From the sequence record OQ383623.1: 64,000 nucleotides of DNA; one strand, 5' to 3'. The position numbers and the translations under genes were made by a program. Within the stretch, counting starts at the first letter, position 1; the number at the start of each line of letters is the position of its first letter. The notes beneath the pieces are model-generated. The model did not search any database and was not told the origin of the DNA. It was given only the letters and a program-made list of their open reading frames with translations. Shown here piece after piece: positions 4,132 to 60,456 of the stretch.

Positions 4132-4207
4132 TGGCGACTCTGGCAGGATTTGAACCTGCGACATATGGATTAACAGTCCACCGTTCTACCAGCTGAACTA
4201 CAGAGTC
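4132..4207 (-). tRNA. trnN: tRNA-Asn(GTT)
   Basis: 76-nt cloverleaf GACTCTG...CAGAGTC-G-CCA, anticodon loop CTGTTAA, T loop TTCAAAT. Confidence 0.95.
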
Positions 4208-4217
4208 TTAAAGAGCG

Positions 4218-4289
4218 AGCATGTGACGGGATTCGAACCCGCGAAATATCCGATTATGAGTCGGGTGTTAATTCCTCTAACTTCACTGC
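4218..4289 (-). pseudogene. Degenerate tRNA-Met/Ile2(CAT)-like gene
   Basis: Anticodon loop CTCATAA and T arm GCGGG-TTCGAAT-CCCGT are intact; acceptor stem GCAGTG/CACATGC has a bulge, position 8 is A, no encoded CCA. Confidence 0.7.
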
Positions 4290-4292
4290 TCT

Positions 4293-4361
4293 TGCTTTGA
4301 CCGGACTCGAACCGGCGACCTTCCTCGAAGAGGCTGCTCTACCTACCTGAGCTACAAAGCC
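4293..4361 (-). ncRNA. tRNA-shaped RNA with a truncated anticodon arm
   Basis: GGCTTTG-TA-GCTC-AGGTAGGTA-GAGC-A-GCCTC-TTC-GAGGA-AGGTC-GCCGG-TTCGAGT-CCGGT-CAAAGCA: canonical D, variable and T arms, but a 13-nt anticodon arm instead of 17. Confidence 0.75.
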
Positions 4362-4369
4362 ATTGTTCA

Positions 4370-4760
4370 TGGCATCATGATAGTTACATTCAACGTACCA
4401 CACCCCTACTGGTTTCCGTTTCGGGGGACTTAACCAGACACCATACGTCCAAGGTCGACGCTTAGGTGTGTTATCAGTTGCCTGACTGGAAATCTCTTAC
4501 GAGACGTCTACGTTGAACCGGCAAGCCGGCCATGATGTGAAGATGGGGGAACGCCCAGGCTTCCGCCCAGTCGAGTGAGGTACGAATCCTTCACTCCTGT
4601 CATCACTGATGGTGACAGCGCTCCCATTGTAAGGTGCCGGTGCATCCCGGCGTGTGTTAGTGCATTCAGCTCCCTCGGGCTTATCTGCGGCAACACGTTG
4701 CCCGGCGCACCGACATATACCACAGTAACCTCGTAAAGTCACTCTGGTATTGTTCGTTGC
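4370..4760 (-). ncRNA. Candidate structured ncRNA B (about 390 nt)
   Basis: Nested stems 4373-4379/4531-4537 and 4389-4397/4509-4517; minus-strand GCAA, GTAA and CTTG tetraloops; own promoter at 4760-4787. Confidence 0.65.
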
Positions 4761-4787
4761 ATACTACTAAGTTATCACGTAAACGAT
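4760..4787 (-). promoter_or_regulatory. TAC-N15-TATG promoter driving ncRNA B and the tRNA cluster
   Basis: TTTAC-GTGATAACTTAGTAG-TATG, exact 15-nt spacer as in five other copies. Confidence 0.65.
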
Positions 4788-4794
4788 TTCACCA

Positions 4795-5400
4795 CTTCCA
4801 ATAATTAACCTAAATTCATTTCTGAATGCGGATGATGGACTTCTTCTTCTGAGCCCGGCCGTAAGGTCAGGTCTTAGCGTCTCCAAGCACCACCCGCTAT
4901 CACGTACATTCGTGGCGTACCGGCCGTATGAGGTACCGCGCCTACGGTGACACACAGTCACCCTAACACTGGGAACTCAATCCCATTCGGTTATCAGATT
5001 GTGGATTTACAGGCGTAGCGTGGCGGCTTAATGGGCCGGTGCTTGCCTGTCCCCTAGGGACGGTTGTCGTGGAGACGCCAGTCTGTAAGTGGGGCCCTTA
5101 CGGGAAAACCCATCGCCTGTAAACCAAACATGATTGAATACCCAGAACCGGACGTTGGAAATCAACATCCTGATGTACTGGAGTATTTCATGCATAAACG
5201 TGTCTCGTATCGAATGAGGTTATGACCGGTCAGATACCCAGCATCCTGTACAAGCGACCTGGTGCTTTGTGTACCTGGCTGCTACGGATTTATCGGCTTA
5301 CCGTAGGTCTAAGCTACTACCGGCTCATGCGGGACATCAACCCGCACAATCTGAGTAAGTATCACGGCTCGAATAGGGTTAGTGGGCCGAAGCCCACTGT
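4795..5400 (-). ncRNA. Candidate structured ncRNA C (core about 365 nt, 4991-5358)
   Basis: 10-bp closing helix 4994-5003/5345-5354 around multibranch domains (5006-5015/5114-5123; 5150-5157/5163-5170; 5222-5230/5319-5328); C(UUCG)G hairpin at 5381-5398. Confidence 0.65.
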
Positions 5401-5643
5401 TTAGCCAGCGTTGAACGATTCATGAACGACGGTCCCAGCAGGATAGTGCGTAGTACCGATAAGAGTAACGGTCAGGGTAAGCCCTTCATCCCAGCGCTCT
5501 TTCGGTAACCAGCGGCAGTCCATCCAATGACCACAGTCGGGAGGAATTGCACACGCAGCTTGCTCCGTAGGAGCCGCCACGATTATGGAATCAAATTCAT
5601 CATACCCGATATCGTCAGTTCGTTCTAGCAAGTACAAATTCAT
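5401..5643 (-). CDS. Small hypothetical phage protein
   Basis: GGAG SD before ATG 5643 (MNLYLLERTDDIGYDEFDSIIVAA). Confidence 0.7.
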   Translation of the reverse strand: MNLYLLERTDDIGYDEFDSIIVAAPTEQAACAIPPDCGHWMDCRWLPKERWDEGLTLTVTLIGTTHYPAGTVVHESFNAG

Positions 5644-5707: not shown

Positions 5708-5783
5708 TGGCGGGGGCACGAGGTTTCGAACCTCGAACCTTCGGTTTTGGAGACCGGTGCGCTACCAATTGCGCCATACCCCC
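5708..5783 (-). tRNA. trnW: tRNA-Trp(CCA)
   Basis: 76-nt cloverleaf GGGGGTA...TGCCCCC-G-CCA, anticodon loop CTCCAAA. Confidence 0.95.
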
Positions 5784-5876: not shown

Positions 5877-6368
5877 TCACCTCCGTAGTTCGTAAGTGCT
5901 AATCTCACCACCGGTGTAGATATCGCATTCGGACGCAATCTCAACAGCACGAACCGCATTCGCGCCCATCTTCATCGCACCCAACGCGTACTCGTAACCG
6001 CTTCCGGTTGCCAGAGGTGGTGTGGCTTCACTCCACCACAACGACACGTCGTCTTCACGCTTCCCACCGACTATCGCTTTCCCTGAGGCCAGAAGCATCA
6101 GGAAAGTAAAATCCATCTTCGCAGGTAACTGCGAGCTTTGTGTTAACCCCTTGTAGCCGGGTCTCAAGCGGACCGTTTCCAGCAGGGCCAATTGTCCTGT
6201 GATGTCGCCGCTTACCCCGAACACCACAATTCGTTCACCGGTAATCCACCACTCCTCGTCAGGAGGACAGACGAATAACTTCTGGGTATTCAGGTTGCAG
6301 ATATTCGACCCACGGGTTAACTGGCCGTCAGCAGCTAAGACTTTTCCATCGAACGCTATCGTGGTCAT
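5877..6368 (-). CDS. HslV/proteasome-beta-like Ntn-hydrolase peptidase
   Basis: N-terminal M-T-T-I-A...LAADGQ and GSGYEYALGAM...AVEIA...D.YTGG motifs. Confidence 0.75.
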   Translation of the reverse strand: MTTIAFDGKVLAADGQLTRGSNICNLNTQKLFVCPPDEEWWITGERIVVFGVSGDITGQLALLETVRLRPGYKGLTQSSQLPAKMDFTFLMLLASGKAIVGGKREDDVSLWWSEATPPLATGSGYEYALGAMKMGANAVRAVEIASECDIYTGGEISTYELRR

Positions 6369-6392: not shown

Positions 6393-6420
6393 CATACCTC
6401 ACGCAGAATCTGTAAATTTT
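6393..6420 (-). promoter_or_regulatory. TAC-N15-TATG promoter
   Basis: AAAATTTAC-AGATTCTGCGTGAGG-TATG upstream of the HslV-like gene. Confidence 0.65.
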
Positions 6421-7005
6421 AATCAGCCAGGTACCGTCGTTTCTCAACGGGAGTACCCACCCCTCTCGTCTGTTCCGAGCCGGCAAGATATGGACCAACC
6501 TCCTCATCGGAGTTATCCCCCAAGTCTGCGGTTCTACACGCAGACCCCTTTTCGACGCAACGCCGAATTCGAATCAGTTTTGGCCCGACGCCAGAGCGGA
6601 ATCAGCGATAACTATCGGAGGTAAGTTCAACGACGTCTCTCCGCTGCCCAGTCCTCTGGCGCTGCCACGGTCAACTCGGATTTTGTCATGGGTGCGCAGT
6701 CGACTTTCTCGACACTCTCGCAAACCGAACTACGCCCGACGTAGCACCGTCGGCAGGTCGGTTATCTACCGAGTACCTGAATGGGTGGTGATTGTCGGAA
6801 TCCCCGCCGACGCTCACCGGTTCTGTTCCACGGCGAAAGTTTTCCAGAACATAATAAATCACGCAGTGTTAGATTGCGCTTTGTCGAAGACACCACGGCA
6901 GGTATTTTCGAAAAAGCGTCCTGGGTAACAATCCCAGGACTTGGAGCCCTAGTGTGCAGGGTTTAAAAAGTGATTGGACCATTGGCGCGGTCAATCGCTA
7001 TTCGC
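6421..7005 (-). ncRNA. Candidate structured ncRNA D (about 585 nt)
   Basis: No credible ORF; more than 10 hairpins, including 6524-6530/6539-6545, 6589-6596/6654-6661 and 6918-6925/6933-6940; promoter at 7005-7032. Confidence 0.6.
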
Positions 7006-7032
7006 ATATAACAACAAACTCACGTAATCAAA
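7005..7032 (-). promoter_or_regulatory. TAC-N15-TATG promoter driving ncRNA D
   Basis: GATTAC-GTGAGTTTGTTGTTA-TATG, exact 15-nt spacer. Confidence 0.6.
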
Positions 7033-7035
7033 AAA

Positions 7036-7240
7036 TTACCGGCTCGAGGCGTAGGCGTCCAGGAGCCGGTGAGTCACACAGCAGTGAGTCCCTCTGCGGG
7101 GATTTTCGTGGAGCTTGTCGTTGAAATAAAAATCCGTCCCTGGACGGGTTGGTGATGTGGGTCGACTTGTCAGAGTCTGCCGTCCAGGGAGGCGGCCACC
7201 GAAGCTATGGGTTTTGGACATCGAGTGGTGGTCTGAACAC
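7036..7240 (-). ncRNA. Candidate structured ncRNA E (about 200 nt)
   Basis: Stems 7038-7045/7063-7070, 7100-7106/7129-7135 and 11-bp 7137-7147/7180-7190; near-consensus promoter TTTTTTAC-N15-TGTG at 7238-7265. Confidence 0.5.
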
Positions 7241-7294
7241 ACGATAGGGAAACCACGTAAAAAATACACAGGGTACCCAAACTAGGACTTCCGT

Positions 7295-7540
7295 CCGATC
7301 ACGATCTCTTAATAAGGATCACGCGCGCGCCTGCACGCGTTTTAAGATCTTAATATAATATATATTATTATATATTAATATATTTATTTATATAAATAAT
7401 TATAATAATTAAATATAATACCTAAAGGTATTATTATATTTAATATTATTATATATTTTAAAAGATCCTGGAGGATACGGGTGTGCGCACGCGCACGCGT
7501 ATAAGGAAAGGGTCTTCGACCCGATCCACAGGATCAATCT
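7295..7540. other. Origin-like element: AT tract, GATC cluster and alternating purine/pyrimidine flanks
   Basis: 7350-7463 has only 4 G/C in 114 bp; 7 GATC sites in 7297-7535; alternating R/Y runs at 7321-7330 and 7481-7503. Confidence 0.5.
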
Positions 7541-8090
7541 AAAAAACAATCTAAGTGATTGTTTTAAAAAGAAATTTTGAGAATTAGATTAAATTATCCC
7601 CTAAGGGGGATTTTAGAGCGAGTTAAACAACCCAAAAGAACTCGTAAGTAACCGACAGTGTGTGTCGGTTACAGAACGATCCAGTTTTCACCCAGACATG
7701 GCACGAAGTGCTACCCAACGTGTGATCGTCGCGGCGACCGGCGACCGTCGTCCCGGAACCGAAACGGGAATGGCTCTCTCGCGCTCTCAGCGGCCCGCTG
7801 GCGCGATTTTCCGGTAGGGGGAACCCAAGTGTACTGGGTTGGGTATAAATCTCGTTCTAGCGCTTTCTAGAGCGTTTTTAATAACTGGTTAAAAAACATA
7901 CAATCCAGAATCCCCATTCCCCGTATTTCCTCGCCCCGACAAAAATAAATTCACCGACTCGATGCAAGACCCCCTCTAAAATGCACGTAACCTGCCCTAG
8001 AAAACGATAAACTATCAAAAATGAGCTACCCTACACCCAGACCACTTAATCGTTTTCTGGTGTTTCCTAGACATCTTTAATCGGATGGTT

Positions 8091-8140
8091 AAAAAAACAA
8101 AAAAAAATAAGATTGGCGTACTCCCCGAAGAGAGTACGCC
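8091..8140 (-). terminator. Intrinsic terminator
   Basis: GGCGTACTC/GAGTACGCC stem with TTCG in the loop and a long T-run. Confidence 0.8.
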
Positions 8141-8147
8141 TAGTGAC

Positions 8148-8657
8148 TTAACACTTGATGGTATAGCCATCAAGGCCAAGGTGTACTGGTTTTATCCATA
8201 ACCCTGGCTCCCCGAAAATATTCAGGTCGTAAGTTTGGTAATGCATGATCTTTGCAGGAACATGCACACCCATGCGTTGCAGAAATTCCCAGACGGCGAC
8301 GTAGCGTTCACGAGTGATGAACATTAATCCGGAGTCGAACCCGGAACCGATGTCTAAGAAATTACCAAGAGAACTGTCAAAACTTGACACGCCGTCTTGA
8401 GTAAGTGCGACCAACCCTTTAGTTAAATCTCTGTGGTTGTCAATGAAGTTACAGAGATCTACGATGGTTATTTGACCGTAAATACGACGGAGGACGGCAG
8501 CAACAGCCAAAATCTCGCTGGTATTTCCGTAGTCACCTAAAGGGTTATGGTCCATCATCGCAGTAATTATGCTTGTGTCGCAGAGGTCGATTAACCGCTG
8601 GTCATGTACCACCAGGTTAAGACCTTGCCCCACCCGCATGGTTGGCGCAGTAAACAT
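8148..8657 (-). CDS. Hypothetical protein (likely start ATG 8657, MFTAPT)
   Basis: AAGGAG SD directly after the stop of the upstream gene. Confidence 0.65.
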   Translation of the reverse strand: MFTAPTMRVGQGLNLVVHDQRLIDLCDTSIITAMMDHNPLGDYGNTSEILAVAAVLRRIYGQITIVDLCNFIDNHRDLTKGLVALTQDGVSSFDSSLGNFLDIGSGFDSGLMFITRERYVAVWEFLQRMGVHVPAKIMHYQTYDLNIFGEPGLWIKPVHLGLDGYTIKC

Positions 8658-51735: not shown

Positions 51736-51763
51736 CATACGTACAGCCGTGGCCGTAAATTAT
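51736..51763 (-). promoter_or_regulatory. TAC-N15-TATG promoter (thyA operon)
   Basis: ATAATTTAC-GGCCACGGCTGTACG-TATG. Confidence 0.6.
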
Positions 51764-60428: not shown

Positions 60429-60456
60429 CATAAGGTTTGGGTGATACGTAAAAGAC
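60429..60456 (-). promoter_or_regulatory. TAC-N15-TATG promoter (uvsX operon)
   Basis: CTTTTAC-GTATCACCCAAACCT-TATG. Confidence 0.6.

What the first reader, a model, noticed from the sequence alone, without database searches (positions are those of the whole stretch)
4370..4787. ncRNA B (about 390 nt) with a dedicated promoter, transcribed head-to-tail into the tRNA-like trio
Seen: promoter TTTAC-N15-TATG at 4760-4787. The first hairpin (4717-4750) has a minus-strand G-U pair. Nested helices CATCATG/CATGATG (4373/4531) and TTCAACGTA/TACGTTGAA (4389/4509) enclose TCAG-GCAA-CTGA, TCTC-GTAA-GAGA and CCGG-CTTG-CCGG tetraloop hairpins, which all indicate the minus strand. There is also a T-loop-like GG-ATTCGTA-CC hairpin (4573-4596). 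Inference: an independent structured RNA whose 3' end is set by the downstream tRNA-like element.
Basis: partly seen in the sequence, partly recalled or inferred. Interest (0 to 1): 0.78.

Follow-up and report, generated by a model that had tools for sequence, protein, structure and literature searches.

The report
Structured leader RNAs of phage tRNA operon
The stretch is the front part of a jumbo Salmonella phage's tRNA operon. It has a conserved phage promoter and three separate folded RNA modules, one of them a previously unannotated tRNA-shaped RNA shared by three phage genera. It is not one 390-nt RNA, and it resembles the unexplained small RNAs of phage T4's tRNA cluster.

Summary
The window comes from Salmonella jumbo phage MET_P1_082_240, an SPN3US-like Seoulvirus.

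The promoter claim holds. TTAC-N15-TATG occurs 7 times in the window, against 0-2 at every other spacing. Six of the seven lie in the 11% non-coding DNA, and three lie 25-29 nt before start codons. The motif also precedes the tRNA array in relatives.

The "390-nt RNA" is really three independent modules:
- **Leader (4760..4630):** two hairpins, found in Seoulvirus and Machinavirus and always ending a few bases before the first tRNA or tRNA-like element. 16 of 43 pairs show compensatory changes.
- **Cloverleaf (4625..4544):** 82 nt, tRNA-shaped but not a tRNA, found inside the tRNA arrays of three genera. 7 of 29 pairs are compensatory.
- **Module 3 (4543..4362):** a multi-helix RNA with GNRA loops, found only in 97-99% identical phages. 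SPN3US lacks modules 2 and 3.

No module matches Rfam, host DNA, plasmids or T4 rnaC/rnaD.

The best reading is a polycistronic precursor cut at the tRNA-like elements into separate RNAs. Expression and function were not tested. I score it a new member of a known kind, of moderate interest.

The parts
4760..4783 (-). Promoter-like motif TTTAC-N15-TATG. The predicted start is the G at 4760, by analogy with the phiKZ late promoter T(-3)ATG(+1).
   Evidence: The TTACGTG and AGTAGTATGCAACGA blocks are identical in 5 phages. The motif has a fixed-spacing peak and lies in non-coding DNA. The same motif precedes the leader in Machinavirus genomes. The phiKZ rule comes from PMC7598289 and PMC7618050.
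4714..4737 (-). Second TTAC-N15-TATG copy inside the 3' half of hairpin 1. Its G (4714) directly precedes hairpin 2. It may be a second start site.
   Evidence: Machina, pSal-SNUABM-04 and pEa_SNUABM_43 have their only copy in this position relative to hairpin 2. The TTAC is not kept in SPAsTU, pEa29 or Caitlin.
4717..4750 (-). Leader hairpin 1: 14 pairs with a 4-nt loop.
   Evidence: In alignment A8, 2 pairs show compensatory changes and 97% of cells are paired. It is absent from the Machina-type leaders.
4635..4715 (-). Leader hairpin 2: a long stacked hairpin whose basal stem is kept in all relatives, while the apical part varies between genera.
   Evidence: In A8, helices 2-5 have 14 pairs with compensatory changes. 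Model R2 hits Caitlin at 37.8 bits and ChrisDB and pEa_SNUABM_4. All hits end 3-6 nt before tRNA-Tyr.
4544..4625 (-). 82-nt tRNA-shaped cloverleaf. It has an 8-bp closing stem (4625..4618 with 4554..4547) and a hairpin at 4617..4598. Its long arm (4596..4573) has the 7-nt loop AUUCGUA. A further arm (4570..4555) is capped by GGAA, and CCA follows at 4546..4544.
   Evidence: Model R1 finds one copy per genome in Seoulvirus, Asesino and three Machinavirus genomes. In A9, 7 of 29 pairs are compensatory, 96.8% of cells are paired, and 0 of 500 shuffles reach this. ARAGORN and the Rfam tRNA model do not call it.
4362..4543 (-). Module 3: a lineage-specific multi-helix RNA. Its closing helix pairs 4537..4531 with 4379..4373. 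It has a CUUG hairpin (4530..4517) and a second helix pairing 4517..4509 with 4397..4389. It also has a GUAA hairpin (4505..4492), a GCAA hairpin (4486..4473) and inner hairpins down to 4409.
   Evidence: It is present only in phages 97-99% identical. There is no homolog by blastn, nhmmer or model R3, even with filters off. The 8 variable sites are compatible with the fold.
4292..4361 (-). tRNA-like element 1. Its anticodon loop is replaced by a UUCG-capped stem. It would set the 3' end of module 3.
   Evidence: Rfam tRNA score 39.9 bits with 5 loop positions missing. ARAGORN does not call it. The SPAsTU homolog carries an insertion of about 45 nt at that place.
4218..4289 (-). tRNA-like element 2, with a CAU anticodon loop and an irregular acceptor stem.
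   Evidence: Rfam tRNA score 31.9 bits. ARAGORN does not call it.
4132..4207 (-). Canonical tRNA-Asn(GUU), the last element of the array.
   Evidence: 75.6 bits.

Best explanation
The region is the 5' part of a polycistronic tRNA-operon precursor of an SPN3US-like, nucleus-forming jumbo phage.

Transcription (inferred): it starts at a phage-type promoter, TTAC-N15-TATG, with the start at G4760 and possibly also at G4714. The likely enzyme is the phage's own non-virion RNA polymerase. It runs on the minus strand through three self-contained structured modules. It then continues into two tRNA-like RNAs and tRNA-Asn.

Processing (inferred): host tRNA-processing enzymes cut the precursor at the tRNA-shaped elements. 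RNase P would cut at the 5' sides, at G4625 and G4361, and 3' trimming would follow. The expected products are:
- a leader RNA of about 135 nt with two hairpins;
- an 82-nt cloverleaf RNA;
- a module-3 RNA of about 180 nt.

What is shown: the structures and their conservation, the strand, the promoter motif's recurrence, and the modular distribution among relatives.

What is inferred: the start site, the processing, the stability of the products and any function.

The most likely roles, given as inference only: the leader sequesters the 5' end and presents the first tRNA for processing; the cloverleaf acts as a non-decoding tRNA mimic; module 3 is a recent and dispensable addition.
For: Identity: the window is 100% identical to OQ383623.1, a Seoulvirus.

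Promoter:
- The motif block is identical in 5 phages.
- TTAC-N15-TATG occurs 7 times at spacing 15, against 0-2 at other spacings. All are on the minus strand and 6 of 7 are non-coding. Three lie 25-29 nt before the ATG of genes.
- The same motif precedes the leader in six Machinavirus genomes.
- phiKZ late promoters are T(-3)ATG(+1).

Strand: G.U pairs and single-side changes to G.U occur throughout. The minus strand also folds better.

Leader: five sequences fold alone into the same shape. 16 of 43 pairs are compensatory, and 0 of 500 shuffles reach this. It always ends 3-6 nt before the first tRNA or tRNA-like element.

Cloverleaf: 7 of 29 pairs are compensatory. There is one copy per genome, always inside the tRNA array.

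Modularity.

Continuity: there is no terminator-like site on the minus strand between 4800 and 4132. There is no support for protein coding.

Precedent: in T4, rnaC and rnaD lie contiguous with tRNA-Arg, and both accumulate as RNAs of unknown role.
Against: - No expression data exist for any member. I found no SPN3US transcript-start study.
- Alignments A8 and A9 were fitted to the models, so their pair counts lean towards the structure.
- Module 3 has no informative variation, and its fold z-score (-2.4) is the same on both strands.
- The cloverleaf lacks a T loop, which normally helps RNase P recognition. Its CCA is not kept in pEa29 or Machinavirus.
- SPN3US lacks the cloverleaf and module 3, so neither is needed by every member.
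- Read-through from upstream promoters is not excluded.
Confidence: 0.65

Rival explanations
1. One reading: one independent structured RNA of about 390 nt, made from its own promoter and ended by processing at the downstream tRNA-like element.
For: The promoter, the strand and the continuity into the tRNA-like elements all hold. The whole stretch folds better than shuffles, with z = -4.3.
Against: The three parts occur separately in relatives. The fold has no helix joining them. The cloverleaf sits where the first tRNA sits in relatives, 4-6 nt after the leader, so it is itself a likely processing site.
Confidence: 0.1
2. Evolutionary debris: the stretch, above all module 3, is decaying spacer or former tRNA DNA in a very plastic array. 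It is transcribed or not, but has no role of its own. The structure is left over or comes from chance and G+C content.
For: The arrays differ greatly in tRNA content between relatives. Most SPN3US-clade phages have no canonical tRNA left after the leader. SPN3US lacks the cloverleaf and module 3. Module 3 has no homolog outside near-identical phages, and its z-score is only -2.4.
Against: The leader and the cloverleaf are conserved across genera with compensatory changes. Module 3 shows no similarity to the tRNA-His and tRNA-Ser that occupy the same slot in Asesino (z = -0.04). Its two GNRA loops vary only at the free second position, and two stem changes give G.U pairs.
Confidence: 0.2
3. Module 3 is a small self-contained catalytic or mobile RNA, such as an intron-like or ribozyme-like insertion, that entered the array in one Seoulvirus subclade.
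For: It shows presence/absence polymorphism. It forms a compact multi-helix junction with two GNRA tetraloops and a possible pseudoknot, read from the sequence.
Against: No Rfam intron or ribozyme family matches, even at E up to 10 on a 446-nt search. It is about 180 nt with no ORF family. It interrupts no gene: SPAsTU has an unrelated 52-nt spacer at that place, and the SPN3US deletion also removes the cloverleaf. No copies were found elsewhere in phage, plasmid, E. coli or IMG/VR data.
Confidence: 0.04

Closest known systems
Phage T4 small stable RNAs RNAC (species 1) and RNAD (species 2) of the tRNA cluster
   Same: They are non-tRNA structured RNAs of about 120-140 nt. They lie head-to-tail with tRNAs on the same strand of a phage tRNA cluster. 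They accumulate as RNAs and their role is unknown (PMC3014915, PMC9697503). rnaC ends in a T-arm-like hairpin, so it too carries a tRNA-like part.
   Different: There is no sequence or structure homology: models R1 and R3 give nothing in the T4 region. The T4 RNAs lie at the 3' end of the cluster, whereas these lie at the 5' end behind the promoter. The cloverleaf has tetraloop-capped arms and no T loop.
GOLLD and ROOL large phage-associated non-coding RNAs
   Same: They are ornate structured RNAs that often lie next to tRNA genes in phages. This description rests on my own knowledge of the published accounts.
   Different: No Rfam match at any threshold. They are 500-800 nt single units, whereas here there are three small independent modules.
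phiKZ non-virion RNA polymerase late promoters, T(-3)ATG(+1)
   Same: The TATG lies at the predicted start, in a phage of the same RNA-polymerase-encoding, nucleus-forming group.
   Different: Here the TATG is coupled to an upstream TTAC at a fixed 15-nt distance. No such upstream element is described for phiKZ, whose promoter the papers call poorly defined. No start site has been mapped here.
Transcribed spacers of bacterial tRNA precursors that act as small RNAs (for example the 3' external spacer of the glyW-cysT-leuZ operon in E. coli)
   Same: A by-product of tRNA processing that is released as an RNA with a role of its own. This rests on my own knowledge and was not tested here.
   Different: Those are short, little-structured sponges for small RNAs. 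The leader here is a long double hairpin conserved in structure, and no target is known.

Membership tests
tRNA (Rfam RF00005 / ARAGORN), tested for the 82-nt cloverleaf | Detected by tRNA covariance model or tRNA finder | tested here: not met
   There is no ARAGORN call. There is no RF00005 hit at 4544-4625, even at E up to 10 in a 446-nt search.
tRNA (Rfam RF00005 / ARAGORN), tested for the 82-nt cloverleaf | Four-arm cloverleaf closed by a terminal stem of 7-8 pairs | tested here: met
   There are 29 pairs in 4 helices, 96.8% of cells are paired, and 7 pairs are compensatory.
tRNA (Rfam RF00005 / ARAGORN), tested for the 82-nt cloverleaf | T arm with a 7-nt T loop and a D loop able to dock on it | tested here: not met
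   The arm next to the closing stem is capped by GGAA in 8 of 8 sequences. The first arm has no GG-containing D loop.
tRNA (Rfam RF00005 / ARAGORN), tested for the 82-nt cloverleaf | 5-bp anticodon stem with a 7-nt loop in all members | tested here: not met
   The stem has 8-9 pairs with a bulge. The model-fitted alignment A9 gap-pads three of the eight rows (Asesino, Machina, pSal-SNUABM-04), leaving 6 loop letters. For Asesino the alternative 7-nt reading is possible.
T4-type small stable RNAs of a phage tRNA cluster (RNAC/RNAD) | Non-tRNA RNA gene contiguous with tRNAs, on the same strand, in a phage tRNA cluster | tested here: met
   Window; T4 locus.
T4-type small stable RNAs of a phage tRNA cluster (RNAC/RNAD) | Homology to T4 rnaC or rnaD | tested here: not met
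   Models R1 and R3 with filters off on the T4 region give a best score of 9.2 bits at E = 0.56, and that hit is not at rnaC or rnaD.
T4-type small stable RNAs of a phage tRNA cluster (RNAC/RNAD) | Accumulates as a discrete processed RNA during infection | not testable with these tools
   No transcript data for any Seoulvirus were found.
GOLLD / ROOL | Match to the Rfam covariance model | tested here: not met
Group I intron or other self-cleaving or self-splicing RNA (module 3) | Match to an Rfam intron or ribozyme model | tested here: not met
Group I intron or other self-cleaving or self-splicing RNA (module 3) | Interrupts a gene whose flanks are contiguous in element-free relatives | tested here: not met
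   SPAsTU has an unrelated spacer at that place. The SPN3US gap also removes the cloverleaf.
tmRNA | tRNA-like domain plus tag reading frame, as detected by ARAGORN | tested here: not met
phiKZ-type late promoter (non-virion RNA polymerase) | TATG overlapping the start site | tested here: inconclusive
   TATG is present and conserved, and it recurs before genes at a fixed distance from TTAC. No start site has been mapped.

The most novel reading that the evidence does not exclude
The cloverleaf, the anticodon-less tRNA-like element next to it and perhaps the leader are purpose-built, non-decoding tRNA mimics that the phage makes from its own promoter. They would occupy or mislead host factors that act on tRNAs, such as anticodon nucleases of defence systems or processing and modification enzymes. 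This would explain why most SPN3US-clade phages keep the promoter, the leader and the tRNA-like RNAs although every canonical tRNA behind the leader is gone.
Probability: 0.12. Interest if true: 0.8.

Novelty: new member of a known kind. Interest (0 to 1): 0.5.

Why it matters
- **Promoter:** the non-virion polymerase promoter of phiKZ-like phages is described as poorly defined. A two-part motif with fixed spacing, conserved in two genera and recurring before genes, gives a concrete prediction that transcript-start mapping can check.
- **New RNA families:** the leader and the 82-nt cloverleaf are two unannotated RNA families with covariation support. One homolog is currently annotated as part of a protein gene. 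They extend to nucleus-forming jumbo phages the 50-year-old puzzle of non-tRNA RNAs in phage tRNA clusters.
- **Non-decoding role:** several relatives keep these RNAs with no canonical tRNA behind them. This makes a non-decoding role worth testing.

Tried and rejected
- **Protein coding:** the three ORFs over the region (81, 49 and 53 aa) have no Pfam or PHROG family and are not conserved, because SPN3US lacks half of the stretch.
- **Known RNA family:** Rfam gave only the tRNA hits, both at gathering threshold and at E up to 10, on 64 kb, 4.5 kb and 446 nt.
- **Host or plasmid origin:** there was no blastn match in 5,426 E. coli genomes or in PLSDB.
- **Module 3 as decayed tRNA-His plus tRNA-Ser:** these occupy the slot in Asesino, but the global alignment gave z = -0.04.
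- **Module 3 homologs:** blastn, nhmmer, two IMG/VR pattern scans and model R3 with filters off all found nothing.
- **Wider diversity of the cloverleaf:** IMG/VR and the metagenome scan added only near-identical or Asesino-like contigs, plus two chance hits in coding DNA.
- **Sigma-70 promoter:** no such site was reported at 4760-4790.
- **The genome-contig scan** was not used.
- **Literature:** I found no transcript-start study of SPN3US-like phages.

Full report
**Source and setting**

The window is 100% identical to Salmonella phage MET_P1_082_240 (OQ383623.1, genus Seoulvirus, SPN3US-like).

On the minus strand the order is as follows:
- an HslV-like gene (6368..5877);
- tRNA-Trp (5783..5708);
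- a small ORF (5643..5401);
- about 1.3 kb without credible ORFs;
- two weak tRNA-model hits (4361..4292 at 39.9 bits; 4289..4218 at 31.9 bits);
- tRNA-Asn (4207..4132).

The finding lies in the ORF-free part, directly upstream of these three.

**Observation**

- The stretch 4760..4362 folds with z = -4.3 on the minus strand and -2.5 on the plus strand.
- The fold is a chain of four self-closed domains with no long-range helix between them. These are hairpin 1 (4750..4717), a long hairpin 2 (4715..4635), and a three-hairpin cloverleaf (4625..4547). The fourth is a multi-branch domain closed by CAUCAUG/CAUGAUG (4537..4373).
- No Rfam family other than tRNA matches, even at E up to 10 on 446 nt.
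- The overlapping short ORFs have no protein family.

**The promoter**

With the spacing fixed the picture is clear.
- TTAC-N15-TATG occurs 7 times on the minus strand, against 0-2 at every other spacing from 5 to 30, and 0 times on the plus strand.
- Six of the seven lie in the 11% of the window outside ORFs.
- Three lie 25-29 nt upstream of the ATG of minus-strand genes, at 6416..6393 (the HslV-like gene), 51759..51736 and 60452..60429.
- The block around 4783..4756 is identical in five phages, while the sequence further upstream diverges.
- The same TTAC-N15-TATG precedes the homologous leader in ChrisDB, pEa_SNUABM_4, pEa_SNUABM_9, Machina, pSal-SNUABM-04 and pEa_SNUABM_43. In Caitlin the spacing is 16.

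phiKZ late promoters, read by the non-virion polymerase, are T(-3)ATG(+1) and are otherwise called poorly defined (PMC7598289, PMC7618050). By that analogy the start would be G4760. This is inference, because I found no start-site data for SPN3US-like phages.

A second copy of the motif (4737..4714) lies in the 3' half of hairpin 1, and its G abuts hairpin 2. This is exactly where the only promoter copy lies in Machina-type genomes, which lack hairpin 1. Its TTAC is not kept in SPAsTU, pEa29 or Caitlin.

No minus-strand terminator-like site lies between 5400 and 4132. Read-through from upstream, and onward into the tRNAs, is therefore possible.

**The region is composite**

blastn against 50,697 phage records splits the 439-nt query.
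- 26 near-identical phages cover it all.
- SPN3US and seven others cover only 4800..4624.
- SPAsTU and pEa_SNUABM_29 match 4790..4632 at 84-86% identity.
- Asesino, from another genus, matches only 4627..4543 at 90.6% identity.

In SPN3US the leader is joined directly to tRNA-like element 1.

**Module 1, the leader (4760..4630)**

- In SPAsTU, pEa29, Caitlin, ChrisDB and pEa_SNUABM_4 it ends 3-6 nt before tRNA-Tyr, the first tRNA of the array.
- In this window it ends 4 nt before the cloverleaf.
- Five sequences fold on their own into the same two-hairpin shape.
- A model built on them (R2) finds Caitlin at 37.8 bits, and ChrisDB and pEa_SNUABM_4 at 28-29 bits.
- On the resulting alignment, 97.5% of cells are paired. 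16 of 43 pairs have compensatory changes, and no shuffle or slid control comes near. That alignment was fitted to the model, which favours the structure.
- The MAFFT alignment of five sequences already showed only pair-preserving single changes in the basal stems.
- The leader alone folds with z = -4.9, and the minimum-energy fold holds 22% of the ensemble.

**Module 2, the cloverleaf (4625..4544)**

Homologs lie in these places:
- in SPAsTU, after tRNA-Gln;
- in Asesino, between tRNA-Ile and tRNA-His;
- in pEa29, before tRNA-Ile2.

Model R1 also finds it in Machina, pSal-SNUABM-04 and pEa_SNUABM_43 at 45-52 bits. There is one copy per genome, always inside the array. The Machina copy lies inside an annotated hypothetical CDS.

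On the MAFFT alignment of five sequences, 5 of 29 pairs are compensatory. On eight sequences, 7 of 29 are compensatory and 96.8% of cells are paired.

It is tRNA-shaped but fails the tests for a tRNA.
- No tRNA finder or model calls it.
- The arm next to the closing stem is capped by GGAA in 8 of 8 sequences, not by a T loop.
- The long arm has 8-9 pairs.
- The UUCG within its loop (4586..4583) is the same in 8 of 8.
- In the model-fitted alignment the loop has 6 letters in three rows (Asesino, Machina and pSal-SNUABM-04); for Asesino a 7-nt reading is also possible.
- The CCA after the stem is absent in four of eight.

**Module 3 (4543..4362)**

It occurs only in phages 97-99% identical.
- No homolog was found by blastn or nhmmer, by IMG/VR pattern scans, or by model R3, even with filters off on all relatives' arrays.
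- It shows no similarity to the tRNA-His and tRNA-Ser that fill the same slot in Asesino.
- Its fold z-score is only -2.4, on either strand.

Eight sequences give eight variable sites:
- two turn G-C or A-U pairs into G.U, which is compatible only with the minus-strand RNA;
- two fall on the free second position of the two GNRA loops (GUAA to GCAA and the reverse);
- three are unpaired;
- one breaks a terminal pair.

This fits a constrained RNA, but the sites are too few to show it.

**Explanation**

The best reading is a polycistronic precursor from a phage promoter, cut at its tRNA-shaped elements into a leader RNA, a cloverleaf RNA and a module-3 RNA, followed by the tRNA-like RNAs and tRNA-Asn.

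The structures, the strand, the promoter motif and the modularity are shown. The start site, the cuts, the stability of the products and the function are inferred.

The closest precedent is T4. There rnaC and rnaD lie contiguous with tRNA-Arg and accumulate as RNAs of unknown role. They are not homologs of these modules.

SPN3US, Proteus phage 7, SPLA5c, phage 1252 and a metagenome contig have no canonical tRNA at all behind the leader. This can be read two ways: as decay of the locus, or as retention of non-decoding RNAs.

**Verdict**

The promoter and the structured minus-strand RNA are real, but it is not one 390-nt RNA.

The leader and the cloverleaf are new, unannotated RNA families of a known kind. 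Module 3 remains a candidate only.

After I wrote out from memory, in my reasoning, what I recalled of a bacterial RNase P RNA sequence.

Noticed in passing
window 4824-5045 (minus): A non-coding block of about 220 nt lies just upstream of the promoter. It is conserved at 69-81% identity in ten relatives from three genera. RNAalifold on 8 sequences gives 44 pairs, 13 of them with compensatory changes. There is no Rfam match. In Asesino it abuts tRNA-Gly directly. It looks like another structured RNA of the same operon region.
   Followed up: partly
window 6393-6416, 51736-51759, 60429-60452, 7005-7027 (all minus): These are further exact TTAC-N15-TATG sites. The first three lie 25-29 nt before the start codons of genes. 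The fourth lies in the ORF-free stretch upstream of the HslV-like gene. Together with 4760-4783 they suggest a two-part promoter motif for this phage group.
   Followed up: partly
window 4292-4361 (minus); L002 about 5186-5290; L004 4270-4390; L101 4239-4335: tRNA-like element 1 keeps its acceptor, D and T arms, but its anticodon loop is replaced by a UUCG-capped stem. The SPAsTU homolog has an insertion of about 45 nt there. Asesino and Machina have oversized 'tRNA-Ile(aat)' annotations of 121 and 97 nt at the matching array position. Their homology to element 1 was not tested.
   Followed up: partly
L005, L008, L009, L012, L016: SPN3US, Proteus phage 7, SPLA5c, phage 1252 and a metagenome contig have no ARAGORN tRNA downstream of the leader. 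Only this window's phage keeps tRNA-Asn.
   Followed up: partly
L101 3782-4078 (Machina gp16); L002 4180-4374 (SPAsTU): The Machina gp16 hypothetical CDS overlaps the cloverleaf homolog (L101 3958-4030), so it is probably over-annotated. The SPAsTU CDS lies between the leader and tRNA-Tyr and may be the same kind of case; I did not check it.
   Followed up: no
window 6400-8148: There are about 1.7 kb without credible ORFs upstream of the HslV-like gene. An extremely A+T-rich repeat block lies at 7340-7460 (GC 33%), with sigma-70-like matches and several terminator-like hairpins.
   Followed up: no
L104 2909-3047 (T4 rnaC): T4 rnaC folds with z = -4.6 and ends in a hairpin that looks like a tRNA T arm. 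rnaD folds no better than shuffles, with z = -0.8.
   Followed up: no
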